DNA of 63,496 nt, filler included, from Klebsormidium nitens (Eukaryota > Plantae > Klebsormidiophyceae): NCBI GenBank assembly GCA_000708835.1. It is 4 parts of 4 records of this genome, joined end to end, with 100 filler letters (N's around TTAATTAATTAA, not from the genome) between each part and the next. Parts side by side here need not be neighbours in the genome. Positions count along the whole stretch, not along the records: positions 30,049 to 46,184 come from DF237994.1; 3 more parts are not named here. One strand, 5' to 3'. Of this stretch, positions 30,049-46,184 are shown piece by piece. Position numbers and translations under genes: made by a program. Numbering within the stretch: position 1 is the first letter of the stretch; each line of letters opens with the position of its first letter. A model generated the notes under the pieces. It saw only the letters and a list, made by a program, of their open reading frames with translations. It ran no database searches and had not been told where the DNA came from.

Positions 30049-30877
30049 AGGCAGCGTGTGACCCTGTCCAACCGTCACAATCAACTTCTCTAGCTATCTT
30101 CTCTCGCAAAAACAGCCTGCCAGCCACACTCTTCTGAGCACAACATCACCAGCTTCCTTTGGGCCATCTTGTGGAGCGGGACCTCTGGAGCTCTCCGACG
30201 CGCTCTCTAAGATCCTTTTTCCACCAGCAAGCAGCCCGCCAGCTCGTGCTTTCACTTCAAGCAGCCGCCGACTGTGCATCAATTCAATCAATCAACCTGC
30301 AACCAACCAAGCTGTTGATTGAGCTCCAGCGCTGTTTGCCAGTGCCAGAAGCATGTGCTGCGATCAACCAGCTTCATGTTGAATTTTTGCCGGAAAGGAT
30401 CAGTAGATAATGGTTGGTGGTGCTCAAATTCAGAGGGTGCCATCATGTGTTTCTTATAGAAGTCAACTGCCACAGTGGGTCGAGTGTGTCTCCACCAGTG
30501 CAGATCGCGTGAGTCAGCTCAAATTTAGCTGCTTTTTTGCAAGGTTTTGCAAGCGCATGTGACTTGCCCAGCTGACCTGCCAAAAGGTGAGCTGAAAGGA
30601 GCTTCAGAAGGTCTCTCTAGATAAGCGTGATTGGATACCTGGTGAACTCGAGTCGTCTAGATGTTGGATTCATAGGGCAGCAATTCCCTCGAGCTACCAT
30701 TGACTCTAGTCCATATTTGGTGCAGCATCCGTATGTAGTTGCCACCCAAAGGAGTCACTTGTGTACTAGAGTTTATCTTAGTCAAGGCTCTGGGCTTTTG
30801 GTTGTAGTCGATGAGGTCACGTGTTTGACGATCTATCCCTGGTGCGTTTTTGACAGATGGAGACCCTATCTGATAAA

Positions 30878-31878
30878 GATGCAGCCATTTGAGCCGAGCT
30901 TAAAGAAAAAGAAGTGGCGTCGCAGGAAGAAGTGAAGCCCCCCTATGGCAGCCAGACGAATGACAAGGTTCTTCTTCGAGTTCGTCCTCTAAATTCAACT
31001 GAATGCGTCAATATATGACCGTTTGTCTCAGTTAACTTGATCAGAGACATTACTGCAGGCCTGGTTTAGTCTGCTGTTGGCATAGTCGGATCTACATCAT
31101 ACTTGGTAATCATCATCCCAACCTGTCCATCAAGACAAATTCCTGGTCAAGTCTCTCTCTCATAGACAGCATGATGACTTTGCCGAGTGAACATTCAAGC
31201 CAGGTTGACTGCCCCGCTCTTGTTGTTCTGCGCAGGAAAGCGTCCTTCCCATCCAACACGAGCGGGGCACAAAGCGCAAACACATTGAAGCGGAGGGCGT
31301 CGATGGGTCAACAAAAGAACCACAAGGAAGTCTCCGCGAGCCTCGAACGGTCGATGGGGCTGGGTCTAGAGAAGCATCAGTAAGATTGCAAGCCCTACCT
31401 GCTAAGTGAAACTTTCCGCCTCAGTGGCTTGTGCTTGATAGAACCTGTTGTCACTCAAAGCCAGCCAGACGACAGCAGTGCTGTCCGTCAAGCGAAGCCT
31501 TCAAACACAGATTCCTCTTCATGGACAGTGCAGACAGCGTAGACAGAGCTTATTGAACTTCTCGTGCAAAAGAAGATTTTCTCTTTTCTTTGGACTGCCG
31601 GCTGCCGTGTCCCCCGCGCTGACAGCATGTCTGTCCGTCAAGCGAAGCCTTCAAAAACAGATTCCTCTTCATGGACAGTGCAGACAACATAGACAGAGCT
31701 TTTCACTGATCCTGATATTATTTGTCTTTTTTGCAGGGTACGGGTGAGCCCGCGCGGCCATCCGCACCTGAGGAGGACTGTAAAAACGAGCCTTCCGAAG
31801 AGGAAGGGAAGGACCCTTGCTCGGACTCGAGCAACGCGCGCCTTGAAATGAAAGGAGAGCTCAGAGCATACCCAATGG
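30878..31878 (+). CDS. Fragments of a hypothetical multi-exon low-complexity gene
   Basis: Exon-like segments with CAG acceptors and GT donors near 31235-31380 and 31738-31878. No domain recognised. Confidence 0.3.
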
Positions 31879-32033
31879 TGAGTCGTTCAACGGTTCCGGA
31901 AGGCTTACTTGACAAGCTCAACAATCCAGGAACGTTGATTTGAACCTGTCAACACTGATGTCTGGCGTTTTTCTATACACAAGAATTGGAAAAGCTCTGT
32001 CTTTACTGTCCACACTGTCCATCAAGGAAAATC
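31471..32033. repeat. ~80-bp direct repeat (31471-31551, 31621-31701) plus a diverged inverted copy (31992-32033)
   Basis: ctgtccgtcaagcgaagccttcaaa.acagattcctcttcatggacagtgcagaca occurs twice; aagctctgtct...ctgtcc..actgtccat...gaa.atc matches its reverse complement. Confidence 0.75.
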
Positions 32034-32873
32034 GCTGATAGAAGATGCATTCGCATAGACAGAACGGATGTCTTTTGATAATACAAGCTGATTCGTCGGA
32101 GATCCTCACAAGCTAGCTCTTGTGGCGCGGGCCCTACTACGTCTAGATAAGGGCCGGCGGCCACACCATGAAATAAACCTCTGCAATTGACCATCGCACC
32201 GCGTCAAAGGCTCGACATACATGACACGGATACATTAAGTCAAGTTTAATTGGTGACTCTAATCAACTGGGTCCATTCGTAACATGAACATGGACTCATT
32301 GTCATATGCGCAAAGCTTAAATACTCTTGCTTAATGAAATGGCACGTATGACCGATTGCCACATCAAACTAGTGCATCTGGGATTCCAGCAGCTGCTGGT
32401 AGCGCGCATGCAGATCATTTATATAGTACGTACAAGCTAGTGATGTTCCATTCAGTTGTAGTGAGTGTATGGCTTTCATCATGTGTATGAATGAGCAGAG
32501 CCATGCATGATGATATCTAGGTCAATAAACTGAGATCCATCTTCGATTTCTAACGGTTGAAGTGGAAGGCTGGTCATGGCAGGCCGGATGCAATGCGTTT
32601 CATGGTAATTGCGCTCTCGATTTTGTAACTTGGGGAACAATGATCATTCAAGTCTATAATAAAAAAAGAGCGTGCGTCTTTAGGCAAACTCTATGTGACT
32701 GCTTTGACCTGAATCCGGAGGAGGAGGAAACCCTTTTGACGTGTTACTATGCCTGGATATAGTACATGATCTTTTATCCACTCTACACTGAACCCATGGT
32801 TGTCCATGTCCGATTTTGCCTACCATCTTGCAAAGTCATTACACTCTGAAACTTGCGATCTATGCCTCATTCC

Positions 32874-33797
32874 TTACCGCACCTTCATGTCATCGTCGTG
32901 CCTCCCGCTCATTGACTTCAAAAGATCCACGGCAATGGTGACCTGCGATGCTAAGCCGCCTAACTCGCTCTTAACCTCACTAAGTTCCTTCTTGATGTCC
33001 GCAAACTCTTTGTCAATGGAGTCAATTCTTGGCTTGAGCCACTCGTCCATGTTTTTTTGGGACACTGCAGTAAGAGCCGGGTTTAGATGCTGCTCAACGT
33101 CTTCTCCACGGGAATCGCACAGAAAATTGCCTGTCGGATTCAGATTGCCCTCGAGGTTCAAGCAGATGTTGCGCATGCAAGAGCTTGTGATGTCAGCCCA
33201 AGAAGGAAATCCTTCTTTCAAAGGAGCATTTCCATCCGTATTCCTGCGCCAACAGTGCTTGGGAATTCTTTCCTGCTTACATGGTTGCCGAACATACTTC
33301 CAACCAGCCACTCGGAGGCATCAGGTCTTACATTAGGTCTCACCTGCACTCACACCCTCGTCCTTCATTAGCTCCAGGGCGAAAGACCTGAGTCGATCCT
33401 TGATCACGTCCTGCGAAAGCGCCCGCGCCATGACGGTGGCGAGCTCCACCTGCCCCTCATCACGACGCGACATCTGGTTGAGTACCTCGAGGATCCGCTC
33501 TTGGCACTTTCGCTCGCCCCGCTCTTGGAGCAGTCCCACAGTATTCGTTCCAGTCAAGAACTGTACCCCGACCGTTAGGATTGGTCCTATGATGCTGAAC
33601 GCCACGCCCCATTTAATGCTTGCAATCAGGTCCTGAAGCACCTGGAAGAAACAGGATGAAAACACGGTTACGTCTCGAGATTGTTGGATCAAACAGGCAA
33701 AAGACCACTCCGTGTTAGACACCCGCAGGAAAGGCAGGATGCAACAAGCAAGAAGGATCCACTTGTCAAAACAAGAAGGGTCGGCCCTCACCACCAC
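32874..33797 (-). CDS. Hypothetical spliced gene with a hydrophobic segment and coiled coil
   Basis: Two ORFs with GTGAGT/GTGCGG donors; GVAFSIIGPILTVGVQFL segment and IDSIDKEFADIKKELSEVK heptads. Confidence 0.4.
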
Positions 33798-36700
33798 AGC
33801 ATGTGATCCATGTCAAGAGCGTTGCAAACAATTTGATAGCGGCCTCCGGCGAAAGTCTGGTTGGCCGTTCTGAAAAGCGCCTCGACTTGCAGCGAACCCC
33901 GAGGCAAATCAACTCGCTCACCTGCGTATCAAGGTCCCCCGGACTGGTCGCTGCAAAGGCAGGCTCCGGCCAAGACAGCGCCGCCAACCCGAGGCCCACC
34001 ATCAACCTGCAGACAACAGCCGGGTCTTAATATTTGGGAAGAACTGCAACATTGGCCTAGGTCTTGATATTTCGCTTTTCCAACAGCCTTCTTTTGTCTG
34101 CTCTATCTAGAACAAAAGAGGATCGGGCCTCGCTCTGTGTGAAGACGAGACTGCATGCACGTGAGGGGTTATGAACTGCTCGGACATTGGCGCCACCAGG
34201 GGTGGATGCTTGCGACAAACCAAGGACAAGGTAATGTACTGGGTGCACTCGCCTGCATCAAGGAATGCAGGCGACTGCCTAGACACAACGGATACAGGGA
34301 GCGAGGGGTAGTCCTCTGGTGGCGGTCGCTTCCTCTCGGTTCAAGGAATGGAGGGGCCTTCAAAGCTTTGGGGTACCAAAATGCCTGCACGGCTCAGAAA
34401 AGAAGGCGCCGGGCTTTCTCTGCAGCGCTCCATTAAAAAGCAACTGAAGAACTGCAACCCCCCCGCTGAAGGCGGCCGGACAGTTCGGGAAGCCAATGCA
34501 TCGCCAAGACTGCCCCAGAGGCAGGCAAAGATGGCTAGGCGGGCAGCCGAGATCGCAATCGCAACTGGCAGAAGGAAGCGAGCCTACTGGGCCGTCAGGA
34601 ATAAGGAACCATTGAAGATTGCTGCTTGAGCCAAGCTTTGAGATCTTTGCTTTGCGCCTCGAGCTTGTGTTGATGAACGCTGGAACCCGGATCAAAAGTG
34701 CGCGAAGTTGGTGACCACGTGTCTAAGCAGACAATGCGCAGTTGGAAGTCGAATTTGATGGGCGGCAATCCTTTCAATCGGGAATTGCCAGAGTTCATTG
34801 AGTGCACTGTCTGAAACATACGGAAATCCTATGGGTCTGTGCACCCTGTTCCGAAACTGAGTCCCTTGTTCTATAGGGACATCTGTACAATGCTCTCTGT
34901 ATAGTCATTACGACCTGATTCTTCTGTTTCTTTTGCATCAGCTGACCCAAACACAGTGCTCGCCATAAGTTCGAAACTCGAGCAGCTCTCTTTCCGCTGC
35001 GAAGGCTGGTAAGAGGTATTCAACCATCTAGTAGAGGTCCATTAGCTGACGGATAAGATTTCAGTGTTCAAGCCACCACAAGCTTCAGTGCAATTATCGT
35101 TTTATTGATTGAAGATTGAAAGGTGAGGTGTGAACCCCCACCTTCACAAGATCGGAGTTTTTAAATGACCCCCCACCCTCTTGACCACTCAGTAAGGTTT
35201 AGTGCGGCAACTTGGAAAGGGGAGGTGCTGTTGACCAGAGAGAGGTGAGCCTTTCCCGTCCATCGACATTTCCAGGAGATCTGAGCTGGCCACTTATGAA
35301 GCGTAGAATCAGATTCACAAAGAACGCTCTCACCACTTCAAAGGGTCCTCCACGGCGCCCATCTTGAGCAGCACCGCAGCGTAGTCCTCCTCCTGAACAT
35401 GCGGGAACAAGTCAAACACAGGCCACACTCAACCGGCAACCTTGGACAACGCAAACGTCATTCATCCCCTTGAATGCGTCCATGGGCTGGATCGAGCAAG
35501 GTCCATGTGCACTGTGAGTGCACAAAAGCAATCAAAAAGTAGATGCCTTAAGAAGCCCGATCATGTGATCCTTTTCTTCCGTCAATCCATTGCCAGGGCT
35601 TGAAGACCAGTGTCCAACACCAAAGCAGGCCACACGCTGGGTCATGTCACACAATATAAAAGCTTGAGACTCTTTGCGCACGACTCCTTGCTTTCTCAAT
35701 CACTGCTGGAGCATCCACCTTGGGGTCTGCAGAAAGAGTGCAGGACAGCATCTTGCAAAGGTGGATGCTGTCGTTGCTGCAAGGTGTGGGTAATGAATAA
35801 TGACACCGAAAGTGTCCATCAGTTCCTTGGTACCTACCTCGACTTCCTTCCGGTGCTTCCCTTCTGCCTCATCCGTCCTCGGGGCGTCAAATCCGCAGCT
35901 GATGTGTCCGATAGCCGGCTGCCTCCCCTGCCTCACCGATGGAATGCCGCGGCCGCGACTGACGCCAAAGGCCTGCAAGTGACATAGGCGCGTTTAAAAG
36001 GGGGGGACCTCTGCAATCGCAGCGTATGCCTGTGCAGTTCCCAGACATCTGCGTCTGCTTTTGGAAAAGAAAGTGCACTGTGCCAGAAGAGACACGCAAG
36101 GCCCGTTGGTTTCCAAATGCTTGCAGGATGAAGGATGAGATTGCAATGCAAATGTTGCTGCCGGTACTGTTGCTTACAGCCATGCTCATAACGGCGTTGC
36201 ATTGAAGCTGCTGCATTTACTAAAAAGGACCGCAACCCCTAATTCCAAAAACGGTCCACACCTGGCAGTTTTTCAAGAAGCTGACTTATTGCTCATTGTT
36301 GCCCCTGTAATGAAAAGCAATCCTGGCTGAAGCCAGCTTGTGGCACTTCACAAGTCCTCAATATGTTTGCTTCATCGCCTCGCTTAGACATGCCCCCAAT
36401 TCAAACGGGGCAAAAGATTCTCAGACAGATCAACATTGTTCGCAATCGTTTTCAATCTGCAGACAGCAGATGCAGCCTGGATTATGAAATCTGTCACAGA
36501 TCTAGGTTTTCTCCATGGACCAGAAAAGTGGCAGCCTGCTTGGAAAAAAAGTGAAACGATTCCTTCAACGAATCGGCTCTGCTTAGAAAGGGAAGCCCAG
36601 AACTTGGCAAGAGTAAGACATTTTAGACGCTTTGTTCAGAGACGCACCTTCTGTCCCTGGAATGTCAAAATTTGTGGCACCAGATGATCCCGGTGTGAAG

Positions 36701-39387
36701 TCACTCGCCCCCAGTTGCGACTCCCTTCAGCGCCCCTGACAGGAGTAGCGACCGGGTTGCTGCTGCCGCCATTCCCGCTAATCCTACCAGGCCCAGAAGC
36801 TAATTTGCGTTCAAACGAGACACCGAAGAGCGAGAGCCGAACCAACACCCCTCAACAGCTTCTAGTTTCAGGTGTTTGCAGAGACAGAAGAGGGGTGCAA
36901 CTAACCAACTGATCGTTGGCATTCAATCGGTAAACCGCTTTTCGGGTGAAACGGGTTTGTGGAAGAAATCTTGGGTTTTTGGCATGCCATTTTCTGTGCT
37001 GTCCAGTGTGCGCCAGTGTGCGCGCGAGCGTACGCGTATTATTCAAAATGGCGACAGCCTCCGGAATGGTGTCGTGCAATGCCGCAGTACGACGTCGCAA
37101 AAAGAGTGGCGACCACCTCCCAGGGACCCTCGCTTGTTCGTCCGCCTTGTTACCCTTAAAAATCCGTCAGATCTTTTATGCGAGAAGAGTCCGGTCGACC
37201 GCTTTCCCAGGAGGTTCGATGGGCCACAGCAAAGATGGTGTATGACTCGGGAAGGGTATCCGACTAGCTACTCATACCTGGCACTTGAAAAGTTGTACAG
37301 TCGATTCACGACTGTTTGTCGTTTTATGCCATTATTGTAGGTCGGCCGACGGTCGCAGGCCCTCCGATGGAGACCCGCATGTGTGCTTGAAAGTCGCAGG
37401 CCGTAGATGACATTTCCAGCCTGTTCCAGGGGGTACAACCGTCGCCTCGGAACCCTCCTGCCAAACATGTGTCAAGTCGGAAACCCGGATCATCAGGGTT
37501 TGAATTTGCACATCGATATCCGACGGTCTGATCGAACGTGACCAGCCGCGCTCGGCGCAAAAATGAGATGATGGCATGCCGAGTGCAGCACAGTGTGCTG
37601 CCAATCTAGTTTTACGCGGTTTTGACCGCGATCGATCGGCTTTCTGACATTCCAACCGTGTACACGTCTGCATATCGAAGTTCTGTTTAATGTCTCTCTT
37701 TCTCTCTTAGATCGGATGCAACGAGAAGACGACCACGTTAGAGGAAGCCTAGGCTTGAGGGCTGGTTGAAAGCTTACAATCTAGTCGTTGCAATTACAAC
37801 CCAGCTTAGCGCGCTCGCTACGGTAGCTTGCTTACGAGACGCCGGTAGTTGAGGAAGACATAGTGATAACCCCCGGCACACACATTCATATTATGTATGC
37901 AATGAGAAGCCTATGGCCCAGGTGGCTACGGCGAGTAGAAGAGAACATCATGCCACCGGACTGACTCTCGATTGCTTCATTGCGAACCCTAACCCTAAGC
38001 CTGAGACGTTTCAAGAGGAGGCTCGGCCCCTTCGGAATCGCTCAACCGCCCGAGCTGAGGCACTTTGGAATCGTTCAACCGCCTCAGTGAGCTGCCAGGT
38101 GGAGCTCGCTCAAGTGGTTTGCGTCAAATTTTTCCATTAAGAGAGAGCGGATCACCGGCAATCTGAATTCGCTCAACCGCCTAAGCTGCCAGCTGGAGCT
38201 TGCTCAGACGTCTGAGTCAGGTTTCTCTTTAGAGAGAAGAGCTCGGCTCCGGAAACGGCACTGTTGGAATCGATAACTGCAACAACCACCACAGTCTCAG
38301 CTGATGTCTGGGCTGAGCTTACTGTTGATGTCCAGCTTGTCCGCCTCGAATCGCAAACTTTTTGGCCAGCCAAAATGCTTGCTCAGGGGATCTATAAAAA
38401 GGGGAGCTGCCCCCTCCATTCAAACAATTCCCCAACACTTTCTTCCTTAGCTTCTCCTCAACCTTCCTGCAAGCATCCTCTTCCCTCTTTCCCCTCTCCC
38501 AACACCAGCTGCCACTGTCTCATCAGGACAGCTGCCGATTGAAGTGACGTGCCAGCAGGGCACAACGCAAAGCTGCGCAGCGCCGGCAGATCATCTTGAG
38601 CTGGCTGCCTCTCCATCAAGCTGCTGGCACAGCGCATATCTCTCCAGCTGAGCAGAACCGGCAGATGCTTAAGTTGATTGCCTGTTCGTGGCCTATTCTC
38701 CATCAAGGGTTTAGAACGCAGAAGTTGCGCAGAGGGCCAAAAAGCTCATACAAGGTGAGCGGGGCGCTTTTTCGAGGGTGCAGATCCAGATGGCTGATCG
38801 TTGGAAGAATACTTAGACTCAGCTTCAACCAGACCAGGTCCAGTGGACAGGCATCTATCTCTAATGCTCAGCAGATGCGCGGCAGATCCGCCAGCAAACT
38901 GGCTCGTTATCAAGAGTTTCTTGTTAAGGACAGCTAGAAACGCTGTGAGCGCTGCGCTCAATAGAAGGGGCAGACTTTGGCATCTCGTGGGAACCTCCAA
39001 GCTTGTTGAGAAAACACGTTTGCACCTTCTGAAAGCTACTATCCTTCACCTTTGTGAACAGATGTTGTCTGGACCGGAACCCAGTTCCAGTGAAGGAGAG
39101 GGCGACAAAAGATCCTCAGTCGGCAGCGACCAGGAAGAGTCGCCGTGTCACTTCCTCCAAGACGAGGCTGACAGCATGATGCATCTGAGCCAAGAGGTCG
39201 GCAACATGTCGCTATCGCCCGGCCCCTTTCGACGCCACGCCAAACGCCTGAAAGTCGACTTCCTTTCCGAAGGTCTGGAAGACAAGTCAAGTCCAGCAAT
39301 CTCGTCCTCAGATGCGCTGGTGCCCGCACTACCTCTCCTTTCAGATGTGGTGAGACGTTTGAGCTGAACACGGTTTTCAAGAGTGTC

Positions 39388-39760
39388 TTGTGTCCCAGAT
39401 GTCCAACCAAAATCATGACTTTCCAGAGGCTCACAAGGGACCATGTCCGAGCCCTCTGTCCGACCAGGAACGTGACTATCTCAAAGGCTCCAAAACAACC
39501 ATGTCTGAGATGTCCAACCAAAATCAAGACTTTTTCAGAGGCTCCCAAATGGCCATGTCCGAGATGTCCGACCAAAATCAAGACTTTTCAGAAGCTCCCA
39601 AACGGCCTTGTCCGAGATGTCCAACCAAAATCAAGACTTTTTCAGAAGCTCCCAAACGGCCTTGTCCGAGATGTCCGATCAAAATCAAGACTTTTTCAGA
39701 AGCTCCCAAATGGCCATGTCCGAGATGTCCGACATGAATCAAGACTTTCTCAACGCTTCC
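39388..39760 (+). repeat. 53-54-bp tandem repeat x~7 (intronic)
   Basis: Unit tgtccgagatgtcc(a/g)accaaaatcaagactttttcagaagctcccaaa(c/t)ggcc; starts near 39390, 39443, 39502, 39556, 39609, 39663 and 39717. Confidence 0.95.
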
Positions 39761-40149
39761 CAACGACAGCAGAATAGAAGATTCACCTCTTTTCGCTCTG
39801 AGTGTCTAGTTGGAATGAACACAAGTTTTAGAGGCGCGCTTTATGCAAGCCAGTAACTGAAGCCGATTCCTTCTTGTATGCAGCCTCACATGGCCCTGCA
39901 TGCCCAATCGACTGATGGAGCTCAGACGGATTCTACTCCTTCACTGGCAACTTCAAAACCTCCCGTAAGTGGAAGAACCCTCCCTTTGTAAGCACACTTG
40001 CACTCATTTGACTGCTAGTGGTAGATTGAGCAGCTTGTTTTGGTGATGGCAGTCAGTGGGTGTGATCAGGCCTGGGTTACAGATGTTTAAAAAGACACCG
40101 GTCGCAGATGCTGCCACCCTGATCGAGATCGCCTTCCTCTCAGAACAGG

Positions 40150-41330
40150 GCCATGTCCGAGATGTACGACCAAAAATCAAGATTTTTTTAGAAGCTCCCA
40201 AACAGCCATGTCCGAGATGTCCAAGCTTTTTGTGCGGTCTTTTGAGAACCATTATGATGACGTCAGCACCGCGGCAGATCTGTGTCCTACTTTTTTTGCA
40301 AACTTGGGAAAACATTCTCCTTCTGCAATATGCTGATATCGTCTCGTGTGCCCTTTCTTCCTCGCAGGATACCGCACCCTGTTTGGACCCCATCCTCGCC
40401 GCCGCACATCATTTCCACTCGTTGGGAGTCGTGACCATCACCTTCGACCTTGAGGAGGAGCGCAATAAGAAGAGCGAAGTCAGGAAGGCCGCAAAGGATA
40501 TGGGGTACTGGAAGCGGGCCAACCACGACAATTGCCTGAGCGAGAAGTTTGCCAGGCCTGGGCGGAACTCCATCGCCATCATCACGGAGGAGTCCGACCT
40601 ATTTGCAGTCGACGTCGACGTGAAGGATGGGGGCTTTGAGGCGCTACAGCAGATGCTCGAGGAGCACGACAACTTCCCAGAGGACACGCCCCGCCTGACG
40701 ACGGGGAACAAGGGCATGCACGTCCTCTTCTCCCTGTCCAAGTCCGAGGAGGCCGGTCTGCGGAACGGCAGCAATCGGACCCGGATCCGGTACAAGGGAG
40801 AAAAGGTGGGCATCGACATTCGCGGCAGAGGGGGGATGCTGTACACGGCACCCAGCAGCTACCAGGGGCTTGACGGCGAGCTCCGGCGCTACGAGTGGGA
40901 TCACGAGATCCTCCCCGACCGCTCTAATCTCATGGCAATTCCGGATTGGCTGATTGCCATCCTGAATGAGGACCAATCGGGTGCGGGGAGCACTATCAAT
41001 GGGGGCGGTTCAAGAACCGGCTACGTCTGGGGCATTTGATGCCAAGCAGCCTAGCTGATCCTGATCATCCACAGCCCGAAGTTCGAGCAGCACCGGGGCG
41101 ATTAAGGGCTCTATCTGGGCCAACATCAGATCAGGCCGGTTTGATCTATGCTTGCAGTCGGGATGCAATGTTCAATTCCAATTGCAGGGGATTAAGCGCA
41201 ACCGAAGCTGTGCCATGAAAACTTTGGAATCGCATTTTTGATAGCTTCAAGCATGATTGGAGCAGCTAACTTCCAAGATCGAACCTTGTGGTCATGTCCG
41301 AGAAGTCCGATCAAAATCGAGACTTTTTAC
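40150..41330 (+). repeat. Dispersed copies of the 54-bp family (40150-40225 and 41291-41330), both intronic
   Basis: ccatgtccgagatgt(a/c)c...caaaa(a)tcaaga and catgtccgagaagtccgatcaaaatcgagac. Confidence 0.85.
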
Positions 41331-41904
41331 TCAAGTCTTGATGGTCTTGCAGGACCGCCGCAGCAACAAGCCAAAGGCGGGCATCCCTCGAGCTGCCTGC
41401 CCCCGTCGTGGGAGTTTTTTGATAAAGAGCCCGACATCGCCGTGCTGGAGCGCATCAAAAGCTGTTTTGCAGAATGCGGCGACAGTGGTTCGCGCTTCGA
41501 CAAGCGAAAGGGCAACCTGTACGTCTTCCGGGTTCAAGGAGAGCGGACATGCCCCTACGGTCATCACCACCAGGGTTCCAACAATCTTTCAATCCTGGTG
41601 AAGGGCAGCAGTTTCTATTACCACTGCAACTCGTCCGAGTGCCAGTCCATCATGCCACGGAAGCAGATCGGCGACTTGAGTGGTGTCGAGGAAGAAGCAC
41701 GTGGCTCTGTGCGACCAGTGGATGTTGATGGAGATGAAGCCGTGCTCGGGTGTGTTACGAAGGAATTCGTGGACTACTGGGCGCTGCAGGGGGACAGGGG
41801 TGGGAGCCGGATAAGTTTTTGCAAATGTATTCGGTCTGCAAGAGGTAAGCACAGATTCATGCCATAGTCTGGATAGGACACAGCCCTTTGGGTGCTTTTG
41901 AGAA

Positions 41905-42105
41905 AGTCGTGATTCAGGTTGGACATCTCGGACATGGCCGAAGTCAGGACCTTTCAGAAAGTCTGTTTTTAGGGCGGACATCTCGGACATGGCCGAAGTC
42001 AAGACCTTTCAGAAAGTCTGTTTTCAGGGCGGACATCTCGGACATGGCCGAAGTCAGGACCTTTCAGAAAGTCGTGATACAGGTCGGACATCTCGGACAT
42101 GACCG
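41905..42105 (-). repeat. 55-bp tandem repeat x4, inverted relative to the 39.4-kb array, in intron 41845-42156
   Basis: ggacatctcggacat at 41921, 41976, 42031 and 42086. Confidence 0.95.
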
Positions 42106-44184
42106 TTCAAAGTCTGTAAAAACGCCACTGGATTGAAGCTATTGTTCACGCCCCAGGATTGTGTACACTTCGGCGGGCTTCTACATGTGGACCGGGAAGG
42201 TGTACGAGCGGGCTCATGACGTTCAAGTGCTGTACATCCTCATGCACCAGCTGAGCACGATCATCGACCGTGTCAGGCGCGAGCTGCGAGAGGAAGAGAG
42301 GAAAATCCCCAAAGATGACAAGGCCAAGCTAGAGATAGTCGAGGCGAAGCTCAAGCTGCTTCGTGACTACAATAACAGGCGTACCACGGAGGACACGTTG
42401 AAGGTTGTGAAAGGAAAGTTGTTCTCGAACACGTTTCTTAACGAGCTCGACCGCAATCCTGACATCCTCAACGTGAGCAACGGAGTGATCGACTTGCGCA
42501 CTGGCAAGCTCGACATCCACCGCCCACGATACATGTGCACGAAGCTTGCAGAAACGATCTATAGCGTAAGTTTTCACTGCTCAATCTGTTGCTTTCCGTG
42601 TCAAAGATTGTTTCTCAGGCAGCCTTCCATTGAACGCAGTGAGATCCGCTCGCAACTCTGAACATAAGGTCGGCATTCGGCTGTTGATTCGTCGCTTTAA
42701 GTTGCGAAGTAGCTTTCATCACATCGTCGAGCTCATGATGCTACACTTGTGATTCTGGTGTAGGGGCTCGAGCTTCCCTCCCCTCGGATCGAAGACTTCT
42801 TCAACGATGTGTTCAAAGGAGAGGAGGAGGTCATCCGGACCCTCCAGATTGTGCTCGGCTACGGCATGACGGGGTCGAAGGCTTGCGAGATCATGGTCTT
42901 CTGGATCGGATTGGGCGGTAAGTCCTGCATCTGGTAATGGACACGAAGAGCTTTTTGATATCTTTCGAGGACAATTCTAAACGGTCCGAACAACTCGAAC
43001 ACGGCCCTAATCTTTTGAAAAATCATGAGCCTGGCCCCTGTGCAAAATCACTGATTGGTTCTAATTGCTAGTCTAGTTGCTTTTGAATCGAAATCTGATA
43101 TCTTGATCATTTTGTGCAGGGAATGGGAAGGGCGTGACCAAGGAGATGTTGGAGAAAGCTTTGGGACCCTACTGCGGGGTCATGTCCACGGACGTGGTGG
43201 TGAGAACGGCGGGGCAGAGACCGGCGTCCAAAGGCGCTCCCACTCCCCATGTATGCATGCCTTGAAAGGGCTTCGCTTCAGCATCACAGATGAGAACAAT
43301 GAGGAGGCAGATGTCGGGCTCGATTACAGGAACCACGGGGGGAGGAAATGTCTCTGCGAACGCACCATACGGCCAGACGGAGACATTTCCGCTCATGAAT
43401 CTCCCAATCCTGCTGACCAACCACCCCTCCAAACTCCGGGACGTCACCGAACCGGCTATGCTCCGTCGGTTGCTTATCTTCGACTTCCCCAACGTCTACG
43501 TGAGCCGGACCAGATTTGACCCGACCAACCCTCGGCACCAGTCTGTGGACGAAGGTTTGAAGGCGAGGATGCAGAAAAACGAGACGCTCGAGCAGTTTCT
43601 GTCATGGCTGGTTCGAGGGGCGGTGAAGTTCTATGCGCAAGGGGAGTCGATTGGAGCTGTCCCGCCCTCTGTCCAGGCAAACTTGGATACGTATCTCGCA
43701 CTGAACGACAAGCTGCAGCAGTTCATCGACGAGCACTGTACAATAGATCCACAGCTTAGGGGAAACGCGGCGGCGTTTCTCAAGGATTACAAAGCAGCGT
43801 CGGGCGAGCTTACAATCAGCGTCGAAAGCTTGGCTGCTAGAATGAACAAGAAGGGCTTTGTAAAGAAAAAACTCGAAACCCAGAACCACTTAGGTAAAAG
43901 GCCACATGTGTTTGTAGGCATTGAAAGCAGTTACGAACCAAGTTAGTCGTGCATTGATGGACACGAGACCTCTTCCTTCGACGTTGTTATGAATATGCAA
44001 ACGTGCATGCCGACCATAAGAAGTCCGTGTCCAACGGTCTGAAAAGTCTGTCTTCATTGCCCGAGTTGTCTATGAAAGCAAAGTATTGTATGCAATGGTT
44101 TGCATTGATAGACAACAGATTGGGATCGGACGGAATGATCATTCACGAGCTTATTCGATTTTGATCGTAGAAGCCTGAGCTTTG

Positions 44185-44598
44185 CTAAGGGTTCGAAGCT
44201 TTTGTCTCAACGGCTGCCGTTGAATTTGAGGTGGGGGTGAGAATCCTATTCTTAGAATCAAACTCGATGCCAGCTTCCTTCAACTTCGAGATCGTCTTGG
44301 GATGAGGTTGCCTAGTCCTTCCGCTCCTCAGCCGCTTGGCAGCATCTTGTAGCAAGATAGCTTGCTTATGTCTCTGATACCAGACAGACCTGTTCTTGAG
44401 TACGTTCTCTCTATCACGCTTATAGCGGGTTTGCCTCTTCATTTGAATCAATTCAATGCACAAAGGCACGCCCTCGGAGGATAGAGGAATCTTCGAGTCG
44501 TTTGGAAACAGTGCATTTTGAACGATACGATGCTTATTACCACAAAGTGTGCAAGGTACAAGACGCGTGATAGTTATCTCAGTGCTGCTGGTCGCCAT
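44185..44598 (-). CDS. Small basic helical protein, paralog of 13416-13745
   Basis: CTLC near the N-terminus; WYQRHKQAILL...KTISKLKEAGIEF. Confidence 0.65.
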   Translation of the reverse strand: MATSSTEITITRLVPCTLCGNKHRIVQNALFPNDSKIPLSSEGVPLCIELIQMKRQTRYKRDRENVLKNRSVWYQRHKQAILLQDAAKRLRSGRTRQPHPKTISKLKEAGIEFDSKNRILTPTSNSTAAVETKASNP

Positions 44599-45068
44599 CT
44601 TGTCGTAAATGTTCAGTTATCTCTTCATTGAATAATTTTTCCAACGGGCAACGCGATTTCAATCGTCTTCGGCGTCCTTGCAGACCTTGAGTATCCCCAT
44701 AGCAATTGACAATAGAAGCTCACCCTCCTTCACGGAATACCCTGCACAATCTCCGTAAGAAACACCTGCTTCGATTATGGCCTTGACGTCGTCGTCACAC
44801 ACGACGAGGGCTTCGTTAGAGAGTTGGCGAAGCAAAAGCAGAACGCCTTGTCGAAGCAAAGCCATGTTCCAGTGGACTTCTGAAGCCACGATCCACAAGC
44901 CTTTCATAGTGAAGGGGCCCAAAGCTCTCAATCTCGTCGATGAACGGAAGCAAGAGCTCTATAGCACCCTCGTGGCTGCTTTGGCACGTAGTACGAATAC
45001 CCACTCTCCACCATTCTTTTTTGTATCACTGGAGGAAAAAAAAAATTGGCATGTTCGGCCTTCGTCTC

Positions 45069-45662
45069 TCAATCCTCGTCGCTTTCAACTGCAACACATT
45101 TAAGCGTAATTCCCTTGCTCTGAGCTTTTCCCGCGGCTTTTGAGTTGCCCGTGGTAGCCGATCGCTTTGCCTTGCCTTTATTAGCAGTTGATCTTGGACG
45201 GCCCTTTGAATTCTGCTTCGTAGCTTTGCTCACAGCTTTGCATTTCTTGGTGCTCCGTTGCTTCTTCTCTGGCTTCGACTCTGCTGAGGCGTGCATCTCA
45301 AGAAGCTTTTCGACCGGTATCTTGGTAGCTGATGTAGAGAAGCTTCCCTGAAAGGGGAGGCCGACAGGTCTGTCACACTTTTTTACTGGAGAGATCTTCA
45401 CTTGATATCCGAAATCCTTCTTTAAAGAGCCTCTTGTCTTTTCTCTCAGCAGTACATAGACACTGCAGAGTGCTTTAGCTGCACCGTCAGATTTTAGCGC
45501 CCTAAATAGCTGGCTACCCGCGCGCGCACCTGCCTGCGATACACGGCCTTCCTCAGCGTCGATTTCCAGCCGAGTGTCTTCAAGGAGGCTGGAAGCATCT
45601 GATTGCTTATGGTCGAGCGCAAGGATCACCTTAAAGCTACGTTTTGAGCATGCACTATCCAT
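45069..45662 (-). CDS. MC1-like DNA-bending protein with Lys-rich tail, paralog of 11256-11750
   Basis: KRSFKV...GRVSQAGARAGSQLFRALK...LLREKTRGSLKKDFGYQV...LPFQGSFSTSA; basic C-terminal tail. Confidence 0.62.
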   Translation of the reverse strand: MDSACSKRSFKVILALDHKQSDASSLLEDTRLEIDAEEGRVSQAGARAGSQLFRALKSDGAAKALCSVYVLLREKTRGSLKKDFGYQVKISPVKKCDRPVGLPFQGSFSTSATKIPVEKLLEMHASAESKPEKKQRSTKKCKAVSKATKQNSKGRPRSTANKGKAKRSATTGNSKAAGKAQSKGITLKCVAVESDED

Positions 45663-46184
45663 GGACCGGCTGTATGAATGTAAGATCAGATAAATACGCT
45701 GCAAAGTGCATCATGCTGCCCAACCTCAGAGGTTGCCCCCCTGAAGCACTTTGGTCGCCTCGTGGACCTGGCAAAATTGTTGACAGCCGATTATTAGAAA
45801 TCGCCCTTTTCATCAAAGTGTCCGCTACATAACGCACTCGGAAATGACGGACGAGCTCCGTCACTATTCTAGAAGGGGGAGTCCCGATTTCGACGAAATT
45901 CGGACTCAGATGTGGGACCCCAAAAGCACAAAAAGCTGGGAGCTTTTGCTAAAATTGACCGCTTGTTGGGAAAAGTTGTCGCTTCAAAGTTTGAATTCTG
46001 GAATACAGCACAAAATCAATGATCATGTATCTGAATCTAAAATTCAAACGGTGGTGCATTTTAGCCGGCTGCGTTTCCATCTCATGTTTTCGAATTCTAG
46101 AATCGAGAAAAAAACAGTATCTTTTCGAGGTATGCAGCCCTCGTCTTACCCAACTTTAGCAGCAAAGGTAGAAATTCGAAAAGG

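What the first reader, a model, noticed from the sequence alone, without database searches (positions are those of the whole stretch)
39062..45704. The same three-gene module recurs in an intronised form 25 kb away
Seen: a second Prim-Pol/D5 gene with five GT-AG introns (one splits the Walker A motif GLG|GNGKG). Beside it are clear paralogs of the small YQRxK protein and the MC1-like protein from the 10.5-17.3 kb island, in a different gene order and strongly diverged. No YR is visible here. Inference: D5 + small basic protein + MC1 is the conserved core of an element family, and one window holds both a young intronless state and an older intron-invaded, integrase-less state. This allows intron gain in virus-like genes to be studied directly.
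Basis: partly seen in the sequence, partly recalled or inferred. Interest (0 to 1): 0.8.

Follow-up and report, generated by a model that had tools for sequence, protein, structure and literature searches.

The report
Intron-bearing giant-virus primase-helicase gene in Klebsormidium
A giant-virus-type DNA primase-helicase gene in a small scaffold of the green alga Klebsormidium nitens carries five old, conserved spliceosomal introns; this copy is broken, and virus-derived genes with introns are already known from green algae, so it is a good new example and not a new kind of thing.

Summary
The piece (30049-46184) has the length of a whole 16,136-bp Klebsormidium nitens scaffold. On the + strand, 39890-43946, lies a Prim-Pol/D5_N/SF3-helicase gene ("D5i") cut by five GT..AG interruptions.

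These are real introns. The last three or four sit at the same positions in four other loci from two other datasets, whose exons are 42-97% identical in protein. The exons evolved under purifying selection (dN/dS 0.2-0.4). The nearest uninterrupted relatives (43% identity or less) lie on giant-virus-like contigs.

The window copy is broken by three frameshifts; related copies are open over the parts held.

Downstream on the - strand are three small genes: P137, an unreported 82-aa gene (P99), and P197. P197's model has the MC1 topology and matches giant-virus MC1-domain proteins by fold only. P137-like, P197-like and D5 genes co-occur in five loci, so a shared gene set is supported.

The "young versus old state of one element" reading is not supported. 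Uninterrupted D5s of the family are only about 31% identical to D5i. In two related loci one sits on the far side of the same cassette. Synonymous divergence jumps more than 10-fold at about 44045, so the locus is a mosaic.

Introns in endogenous giant-virus genes are already described.

The parts
39890..43946 (+). D5i: interrupted Prim-Pol/D5_N/SF3-helicase (D5-type primase-helicase) gene. Six exons are modelled: 39890-39964, 40368-40980, 41353-41844, 42157-42565, 42764-42917, 43120-43946. This copy is broken by three frameshifts and has no other premature stop in the conserved frames.
   Evidence: Pfam Prim-Pol and D5_N. Colinear match to phrog_1156. Junctions. Frameshift counts. Only the 3' part is annotated, as K. 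nitens KFL_010450035.
40515..40949 (+). Prim-Pol (archaeo-eukaryotic primase) domain, inside exon 2
   Evidence: Pfam PF09250, E 5.2e-16, residues 154-298 of ORF 40056-41039
42176..42565 (+). D5_N domain, inside exon 4
   Evidence: Pfam PF08706, E 2e-15; several PHROG primase families
42764..43946 (+). SF3 helicase part and C-terminal domain (exons 5-6, with intron 5 between them). Walker A is split by intron 5. Walker B, the motif C 'TN' and an RR pair are conserved in relatives.
   Evidence: phrog_1156 positions 522-826; alignment A3
39965..40367 (+). Intron 1 (GTAAGT..CAG), carrying two copies of the 54-nt repeat. This intron has the least support: L007 only shows a consensus acceptor a few codons upstream of the same conserved peptide.
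40981..41352 (+). Intron 2 (weak donor GTGCGG..CAG), carrying one repeat copy. L007 has an intron in the same region, but in phase 2 against phase 1 here, so the exact junction is uncertain.
41845..42156 (+). Intron 3 (GTAAGC..CAG), phase 2 in relatives, carrying about 3.8 inverted copies of the repeat. The position is shared with L004 (acceptor), L007, L008 (GC donor) and L131.
42566..42763 (+). Intron 4 (GTAAGT..TAG), phase 0. The position is shared with L004, L007, L008 and L131.
   Evidence: contiguity in the intronless L001 D5 (616 to 618)
42918..43119 (+). Intron 5 (GTAAGT..CAG), phase 1, splitting Walker A. The position is shared with L004, L007, L008 and L131.
39385..39765 (+). Array of about 6.7 copies of a 54-nt repeat upstream of exon 1. 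It is probably intronic if the ORF 38798-39364 is a further 5' exon.
38798..39364 (+). Upstream open frame, a probable additional 5' exon. Acidic SEGEGD and basic RRHAKRLK motifs are conserved in L007. In both loci the frame ends at a GTGAG donor (window 39350), and it is in phase with an acceptor at 39883.
   Evidence: no Pfam or PHROG hit
44185..44598 (-). P137: small basic protein with a predicted beta-hairpin carrying C-x2-C and a long basic helix with the WYQ.HK motif. It belongs to a family found next to D5 genes.
   Evidence: homologues P0004 (67%) and L007 (54-56%); link to the A5 family; dN/dS 0.24; model pLDDT 67
44659..44907 (-).
   Evidence: 43% identity to L004 and 51% to L007; dN/dS 0.47; no family hit
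45069..45662 (-). P197: MC1-like-fold domain of about 125 aa followed by a disordered lysine-rich tail
   Evidence: homologues P0001-P0003; model topology b1-b2-a1-b3-b4-b5; BFVD hits to giant-virus MC1-domain proteins; dN/dS 0.10-0.17
44040..44050 (.). Approximate divergence boundary against L004: about 88-98% nucleotide identity to the left and about 70-78% to the right
45844..46184 (+). Open frame cut by the scaffold end, 49% identical over 57 aa to the L004 region upstream of its 357-aa gene

Best explanation
The piece is a small Klebsormidium nitens scaffold carrying part of a giant-virus-derived (Nucleocytoviricota-like) gene cluster that sits in the algal nuclear genome.

D5i, its primase-helicase gene, belongs to a clade of D5 genes found so far only in Klebsormidium-like assemblies. 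An ancestor of that clade, related to intronless giant-virus D5, acquired at least five spliceosomal introns. The gene then diversified into several paralogues that kept the intron positions and stayed under purifying selection. It must therefore have been expressed through nuclear transcription and host splicing. That fits either a host-adapted ('latent-programme'-like) viral gene or a domesticated one. The K. nitens copy on this scaffold has since decayed through three frameshifts.

The neighbouring intronless cassette is also under purifying selection. It encodes a small basic helix protein (P137), an unknown protein (P99), and a protein with an MC1-like fold and a lysine-rich tail (P197). 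P197 most likely binds and compacts DNA, by analogy with mimivirus gp275. The cassette has a separate history from D5i, so the locus is a recombinant mosaic.

Shown: domains, intron positions and their conservation, selection, breaks, co-occurrence, mosaic divergence. Inferred: splicing in vivo, DNA binding by P197, giant-virus origin of the whole cluster.
For: Host:
- A K. nitens protein, KFL_010450035, sits on a 16,136-bp contig, exactly the piece length. It matches window 43290-43907 at 98%.
- A plant-type TIR-NB-ARC-LRR gene lies next to a sister element in L001.

Domains.

Introns:
- Splice sites are conserved in L004.
- The same positions occur in L007, L008 and L131, with exon protein identity of 42-87%.
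- L007 exons 3-6 are open with consistent phases.
- The intronless relatives L001, L129 and L130 are contiguous across the junctions.

Selection:
- Window vs L004: dS 0.078, dN 0.029, dN/dS 0.38, with exons 96-98% and introns 87% identical.
- L004 vs L007: dS 0.90, dN/dS 0.20.

Origin:
- Of 9,588 HMMER hits, the best full-length one (43% identity) lies on a contig with EsV_1_7_cys, PCNA, Bro-N and kinase genes.
- NCLDV-like genes and giant-virus endogenisation in Klebsormidium are already reported (PMC5294986; PMC11244446).

Breaks.

Cassette.

MC1-like fold: and 10.1101/2024.02.22.580433.

Mosaic.
Against: - No transcript evidence for any junction was available.
- Intron 1 has only weak comparative support, and the donor of intron 2 is weak with a phase that differs from L007.
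- No giant-virus hallmark gene (capsid, packaging ATPase, PolB, VLTF3) lies on this scaffold. The 'giant-virus cluster' label rests on D5 relatives and the MC1-like fold.
- The organisms behind L004/L008 (Logan SRR23617307) and L001-L007/L131 (JGI 3300060284/85) are not named. 'Klebsormidium-like' is an inference.
- L004 is a short-read contig and could be chimeric at the divergence boundary.
- P197 fails every sequence-level test for MC1.
Confidence: 0.7

Rival explanations
1. One reading: the locus is an old, integrase-less, intron-invaded copy of the same mobile element family whose young copies are intronless. The pair would then show intron gain after insertion.
For: The three families co-occur. 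Intronless family members exist (L001-L004). No recombinase was found here.
Against: - D5i is only about 31% identical to the family's intronless D5, and 43% to the nearest intronless relative of any kind.
- The introns are shared by paralogues down to 42% identity and kept under dN/dS of about 0.2. They are therefore an ancestral trait of a separate D5 lineage and not decay of one insertion.
- Both D5 types lie side by side in L004 and L007.
Confidence: 0.12
2. D5i and its neighbours belong to a latent giant-virus-like element of Klebsormidiophyceae that is still able to move. It would carry spliceosomal introns in part of its own genes, as reported for the Chlamydomonas punuivirus, and would recombine with incoming relatives.
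For: - Several diverged D5i copies with the same introns occur within one sample (L007 and L131; L004 and L008).
- Divergence is mosaic, including a 357-aa gene 90% identical between loci whose neighbours are 55-75% identical.
- The cassette genes are under purifying selection.
- There is a precedent in 10.64898/2026.10.09.758095.
Against: - No virion or other hallmark genes were seen in the about 16 kb here or in the flanks fetched.
- The window copy is broken.
- No relative was found in IMG/VR with the pattern searches.
- Paralogy by ordinary genomic duplication explains multiple copies equally well.
Confidence: 0.15
3. The interruptions are not introns. They are insertions of a repeat-bearing element (the 54-nt repeat) into a dead gene.
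For: Four of the non-coding stretches in the window hold the same 54-nt repeat. The window copy is a pseudogene.
Against: - The positions are identical in L008 and L131, which lack the repeat altogether.
- The ends are GT/GC..AG with consistent phases, and relatives have open exons.
- Exons are under purifying selection while the interruptions diverge faster.
Confidence: 0.03

Closest known systems
Spliceosomal introns in genes of giant endogenous viral elements of green algae (Chlamydomonas GEVEs; punuivirus)
   Same: Giant-virus-type genes inside an algal nuclear genome carry host-type GT-AG introns. It is an open question whether the introns belong to the virus or arose after insertion (PMC9693826; 10.64898/2026.10.09.758095).
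   Different: The host here is a streptophyte (Klebsormidium). The gene is the D5 primase-helicase. Intron positions are shown to be conserved across diverged paralogues with dN/dS of about 0.2. No full viral element is visible on this scaffold.
NCLDV D5-type primase-helicase (Prim-Pol + D5_N + SF3 helicase); NCLDV-like genes reported in Klebsormidium
   Same: Same three-part architecture. The nearest full-length relatives are on giant-virus-like contigs. Klebsormidium is already known to hold phycodnavirus-like core genes (PMC5294986).
   Different: That survey's table lists no D5 for K. flaccidum. The gene here is annotated only as a 209-aa fragment. Identity to any uninterrupted relative is 43% or less.
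Mimivirus gp275 (R252) and other giant-virus MC1-domain proteins; archaeal MC1
   Same: The P197 model has the b1-b2-a1-b3-b4-b5 topology described for MC1 and gp275. It matches giant-virus MC1-domain proteins in BFVD (E 1e-3 to 2e-2; best hit an uncharacterised mimivirus protein, E 8e-6). It also has a basic tail suited to DNA binding.
   Different: There is no Pfam MC1 hit for any of four family members even at E<=10. There is no PDB hit by sequence profile or by Foldseek. Whether it has the DNA-bending Arg/Lys of the helix was not examined.
Introner elements (introns that multiply as repeats)
   Same: Several introns of one gene share a repeated sequence.
   Different: The shared part is a 54-nt tandem unit and not the whole intron. 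The older paralogues L008 and L131 have the same introns without it. No target-site duplications or terminal repeats were looked for, and a genome-wide distribution could not be obtained.

Membership tests
D5-type primase-helicase | N-terminal Prim-Pol (AEP) domain | tested here: met
   PF09250, E 5.2e-16, 59.9 bits against a cut-off of 22.8
D5-type primase-helicase | D5_N domain ahead of the helicase | tested here: met
   PF08706, E 2e-15, 57.8 bits against a cut-off of 22.4
D5-type primase-helicase | SF3 helicase core with Walker A, Walker B and motif C in one reading frame | tested here: not met
   The motifs are present and colinear, but the window copy changes frame in this part. They are in one frame in L004, L007, L008 and L131.
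Spliceosomal introns | GT(GC)..AG ends with a pyrimidine-rich 3' end | tested here: met
   Donors: GTAAGT three times, GTAAGC once, GTGCGG once. Acceptors: yAG|G.
Spliceosomal introns | Same position and phase in homologues, with sequence diverging faster than the exons | tested here: met
   Introns 3-5 are shared by L004, L007, L008 and L131. Intron 2 is shared by L007 only, with a different phase. Introns are 87% identical against 96-98% for exons.
Spliceosomal introns | Removal gives one open frame | tested here: inconclusive
   Phases and open exons are consistent in L007. They are not in the window because of three frameshifts.
Spliceosomal introns | Spliced transcripts | not testable with these tools
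   No RNA data were at hand. No transcript-derived protein spanning a junction was found.
MC1 chromosomal protein (PF05854) | Sequence match to the family profile | tested here: not met
   No Pfam hit for P197 or its three homologues at E<=10. No PDB profile hit.
MC1 chromosomal protein (PF05854) | b1-b2-a1-b3-b4-b5 pseudo-barrel fold | tested here: inconclusive
   The model (4-sequence alignment; overall mean pLDDT 70.4, higher over the first ~125 residues than in the tail) has this order of elements. BFVD hits include MC1-domain proteins. Nothing in the PDB search reached E<=0.001 and the best rows were unrelated proteins.
Giant endogenous viral element (Nucleocytoviricota) | Several hallmark genes (capsid, A32 ATPase, PolB, VLTF3) linked in one region | tested here: not met
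   Only D5 was found among the ORF segments scanned. The scaffold is only 16 kb.
Giant endogenous viral element (Nucleocytoviricota) | Closest relatives of the marker gene are giant-virus genes | tested here: met
   The best full-length hits sit on contigs with EsV_1_7_cys, PCNA, Bro-N, kinases and glycosyltransferase. No tree was built.
Polinton-like virus / virophage-type element | Double and single jelly-roll capsid genes, packaging ATPase, and a recombinase or integrase | tested here: not met
   No such Pfam or PHROG hit in the piece or in the neighbours tested
Introner elements | Near-identical whole introns spread over many genes, with insertion signatures | not tested
   Only a shared 54-nt unit was seen, within one gene. 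The one metagenome scan used too short a pattern and returned single-match hits that look like chance.

The most novel reading that the evidence does not exclude
The interrupted D5 and its cassette are part of a giant-virus-like element of Klebsormidiophyceae that is still evolving as a lineage of its own. It would carry spliceosomal introns in its own replication gene and exchange modules by recombination. The 54-nt arrays are confined to the non-coding parts of this one gene and are as conserved between genomes as its exons. On this reading they would be functional cis-elements (for example binding sites near the replication gene) and not junk.
Probability: 0.12. Interest if true: 0.75.

Novelty: new member of a known kind. 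Interest (0 to 1): 0.45.

Why it matters
Whether introns in endogenous giant-virus genes belong to the virus or arise after insertion is stated as open in the literature (PMC9693826). This D5 clade gives a clean case.

- Five introns sit at fixed positions.
- They are kept through divergence down to about 42% protein identity.
- The exons stayed under purifying selection.
- The host is a streptophyte alga close to the land-plant lineage.

This shows long-term expression of a viral replication gene through the host spliceosome. It also points to gene models that current K. nitens annotation misses.

Tried and rejected
1. A non-GT (GA) donor for intron 3, which I first used to keep the window frame. 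I took it as a hint of dinoflagellate-type splicing. It is rejected: L007 and L008 show that coding continues to the conserved GTAAGC/GCAAGT donor, and the window has a frameshift instead. The GA model would have bridged a break.
2. Dinoflagellate host: rejected once the K. nitens protein was found.
3. Exact look-up of P137 in public assemblies: nothing.
4. Rfam scan of the piece: nothing.
5. PDB sequence searches for P137, P197 and the P197 profile: nothing.
6. Foldseek of P197 against PDB: nothing at E<=0.001. Foldseek of the low-confidence P137 model against BFVD: nothing usable.
7. IMG/VR pattern searches with the last D5 block, P0005 and the P197 alignment: no relatives. A 20-nt repeat core gave one single match, most likely chance.
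9. Pfam and PHROG scans of the conserved neighbours (350-358, 271, 413, 439 aa and others): no function found.
10. Paper search for SRR23617307: none.

Exons were searched one by one, by reference.

- In one search the script concatenated in-frame D5 blocks in memory to pool substitution counts. Two of those blocks lie on either side of frame changes. Nothing was saved or printed, and later pooling summed counts instead.
- One search printed the size and direction of two indels, without places.
- My notes name the exons that hold the breaks, without coordinates.

Full report
**What the piece is.** A search with the last D5 block returned 'hypothetical protein KFL_010450035 [Klebsormidium nitens]'. 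This 209-aa protein sits on a contig of 16,136 bases, exactly the length of the piece 30049-46184. It maps to window 43290-43907 at 98%. The piece is therefore a whole small scaffold of the streptophyte alga K. nitens. GC content is about 50% throughout. No Rfam family matches.

**The interrupted gene.** Pfam finds Prim-Pol (E 5e-16) and D5_N (E 2e-15) on the + strand. Every coding block matches a single 855-position primase profile, phrog_1156, in order:

| Window block | Profile positions |
|---|---|
| 40368-40979 | 34-191 |
| 42158-42565 | 383-516 |
| 42764-42907 | 522-563 |
| 43107-43262 | 568-598 |
| 43266-43943 | 629-826 |

From the sequence and from relatives, the exon model is 39890-39964, 40368-40980, 41353-41844, 42157-42565, 42764-42917 and 43120-43946. 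That gives five GT..AG introns of 403, 372, 312, 198 and 202 nt.

**Are they introns?** Four other loci carry the same interruptions.

| Locus | Source | What it shows |
|---|---|---|
| L004 | Logan SRR23617307 | Aligns to window 42030-46043. Donors and acceptors of introns 4 and 5, and the acceptor of intron 3, are conserved. Exons 96-98% and introns 87% identical |
| L007 | JGI 3300060284, 121-kb contig | All blocks at 48-87% protein identity, with gaps at the same places. Exons 3-6 open, with consistent phases |
| L008 | Logan SRR23617307 | 42-70% identity. Introns 3-5 present, one with a GC donor |
| L131 | JGI 3300060284 | 42-76% identity. Introns 3-5 present |

Uninterrupted relatives are contiguous across the junctions. 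In L001 D5, residue 616 is followed by 618 and about 665 by 668. In L129 and L130 the blocks abut.

Selection on the exons:
- Window vs L004: dS 0.078, dN 0.029, ratio 0.38, from 22.5 synonymous and 29.5 non-synonymous changes over 303 and 1023 sites.
- L004 vs L007, both open: dS 0.90, dN 0.18, ratio 0.20.

Conserved positions, canonical ends, faster-diverging interiors and constrained exons are the signature of spliceosomal introns in a gene that has been expressed. Intron 1 rests on consensus sites, plus a similar acceptor in L007. Intron 2 has a weak donor, and its phase differs from L007.

**State of the window copy.** It is broken by three frameshifts. Two were counted against L004, and they are not in homopolymer runs. 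One was seen against L007 and L008. There is no further premature stop in the conserved frames. The public annotation models only the part after the last shift. L004's last exon, and L007's exons 3-6, are open.

**Origin.** An all-against-library HMMER search with the open last exon of L004 (P0005) found 9,588 proteins at E<=1e-3. Only 26 reached E<=1e-30.
- The nearest hits are exon-sized products from other assemblies (58-75% identity, 265-269 aa). This is what a shared exon boundary would give.
- The best full-length proteins are 39-43% identical. Two were inspected. They lie on contigs with EsV_1_7_cys, PCNA, Bro-N and protein kinases, or with glycosyltransferase, 2OG-Fe(II) oxygenase and a 1,591-aa ORF. 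These are giant-virus-like contexts.
- NCLDV-like core genes in Klebsormidium are already on record, although that survey lists none for D5 in K. flaccidum (PMC5294986). Giant-virus endogenisation in Klebsormidium is also mentioned in PMC11244446.

**The neighbours.**

*P197 (45069-45662, -).* It has three JGI homologues at 47-58% identity. A four-sequence AlphaFold model (mean pLDDT 70; the N-terminal ~125 residues score well above the tail) gives b1-b2-a1-b3-b4-b5, an extra helix and a disordered lysine-rich tail. This is the topology described for MC1 and for mimivirus gp275 (10.1101/2024.02.22.580433). Foldseek against BFVD returns giant-virus proteins, several named 'Chromosomal protein MC1 domain-containing' (E 1e-3 to 2e-2). 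The best hit is an uncharacterised mimivirus protein at E 8e-6. Against this, Pfam MC1 is not hit by any of the four members even at E<=10. PDB gives nothing by profile or by fold. 'MC1-like' therefore holds at the level of fold only.

*P137 (44185-44598, -).* It has homologues in L004 (67%) and L007 (54-56%). A modest model shows a beta-hairpin and a long basic helix. Its profile matches the small proteins that sit directly beside each uninterrupted D5 in L001, L002, L004 and L007. The hhalign probability is 89.6%, E 1.9e-6, over 42 columns. Reciprocal HMM hits range from E 1.6e-6 to 3e-3 among 2,296 ORF segments.

*A third gene (44659-44907, -).* It is conserved in L004 and L007.

All three genes are under purifying selection, with ratios of 0.10-0.47.

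**Co-occurrence and architecture.** In L001, L002/L003 and the left half of L004 the order is: uninterrupted D5, small protein, 350-358-aa protein, (271-aa protein), then a divergently transcribed P197-like gene. These D5s are 61-76% identical to each other but only about 31% identical to D5i.

In L004 the order is: D5i, P137, P99, P197, 357-aa gene, small protein, uninterrupted D5. L007 has the same series, ending in a different uninterrupted D5 of 822 aa. The window shows D5i, P137, P99, P197 and the start of a frame similar to L004's next segment, and then the scaffold ends.

So the three families do travel together. P197, however, fits the unit of the uninterrupted D5, and the window trio may join two units. 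L131 has a D5i paralogue without the cassette within the 4.5 kb of flank held; L008 is only a 4.5-kb contig.

**Mosaic history.** Between the window and L004, identity falls from about 88-98% to about 70-78% near 44045. That point lies about 100 nt past the D5i stop. Synonymous divergence is 0.078 in D5i against 0.85-1.16 in P137, P99 and P197. Between L004 and L007 the 357-aa protein is 90% identical, while D5i is 75% and the small genes are lower. Segments of this locus therefore have different histories, through recombination, replacement or gene conversion. A chimeric short-read contig could mimic the first jump, but it could not produce the shared gene order.

**The 54-nt repeat.** A 54-55-nt unit occurs only in the non-coding parts of D5i.

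| Locus | Where the repeat lies |
|---|---|
| Window | About 6.7 copies upstream (39385-39765), two in intron 1, one in intron 2, about 3.8 inverted in intron 3 |
| L007 | Upstream and in introns 3, 4 and 5, with the same switch of orientation |
| L004 | At the contig end, in intron 3 |
| L008, L131 and six other loci | Absent |

Between the window and L007 the repeat is 76-79% identical, about the same as the exons, and it gave the only blastn hits between the introns of the two loci. What the repeat does is unexplained.

**A probable sixth intron.** The frame 38798-39364 shares acidic and basic (RRHAKRLK-type) motifs with L007. In both loci it ends at a GTGAG donor. In the window that donor is in phase with an acceptor at 39883, just before the first modelled exon. 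If this is right, the repeat array is intronic and the product is longer than 855 aa.

**Comparison with what is known.** Spliceosomal introns in giant endogenous viral elements of green algae are published (PMC9693826). A 2026 preprint reports 61 intron-bearing genes in a latent Chlamydomonas giant virus, enriched among latency genes (10.64898/2026.10.09.758095). This finding is a new example of that kind. It comes from a streptophyte and has unusually clear evidence that the introns are old and the gene was constrained.

**Verdict.**
- The 'module' inference is supported.
- The 'young versus old state' inference, and the promise of reading intron gain directly, are not supported.
- The copy in hand is a pseudogene.

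Noticed in passing
window 39385-39765, 40148-40241, 41289-41327, 41897-42105; L007 6395-6782, 8728-8830, 9375-9472, ~9852: A 54-55-nt tandem unit is found only in the introns and upstream region of D5i, in three genomes. It is in + orientation 5' and - orientation 3'. Between the window and L007 it is as conserved as the exons. It is absent from older paralogues that have the same introns.
   Followed up: partly
window 38798-39364 and 39350/39883: An upstream frame has motifs conserved in L007 (SEGEGD; MSLSPG.F.RHAKR.KV, which looks like a nuclear localisation signal). In both loci it ends at a GTGAG donor. It is probably a further 5' exon of D5i.
   Followed up: partly
window ~44045: Sharp change in divergence from L004: dS 0.08 to the left and about 1 to the right. 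It lies in the 238-nt spacer between the convergent D5i and P137 genes.
   Followed up: yes
window 44659-44907 (-): A conserved 82-aa gene lies between P137 and P197. It has no family or fold assignment.
   Followed up: partly
L004 3584-4657 and L007 12880-13950: A 356-357-aa protein is 90% identical between two loci whose neighbouring genes are 55-75% identical. It is distantly related (24-26%) to both the 358-aa and 271-aa proteins of L001. Its function is unknown.
   Followed up: partly
L001 12821-15241: An intronless TIR-NB-ARC-LRR (plant NLR-type) gene lies 2.3 kb from the P197-like gene of a sister element.
   Followed up: no
window 30889-33501 and 38170-38700 vs L007 976-3603 and 4414-4929: Weak colinear translated similarity extends far to the left of D5i. 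The window has about 4.7 kb (33500-38197) that L007 lacks. The conserved region is therefore larger than the finding.
   Followed up: no
L008 ~1730-1745: Intron 3 of this paralogue has a GC donor (AG|GCAAGT) where the others have GT.
   Followed up: no
L002 13440-14201, L005 6903-7655: A Herpes_ori_bp-type (SF2 helicase) fragment (Pfam E 6e-21) lies a few kb beyond the P197-like gene in the intronless elements.
   Followed up: no
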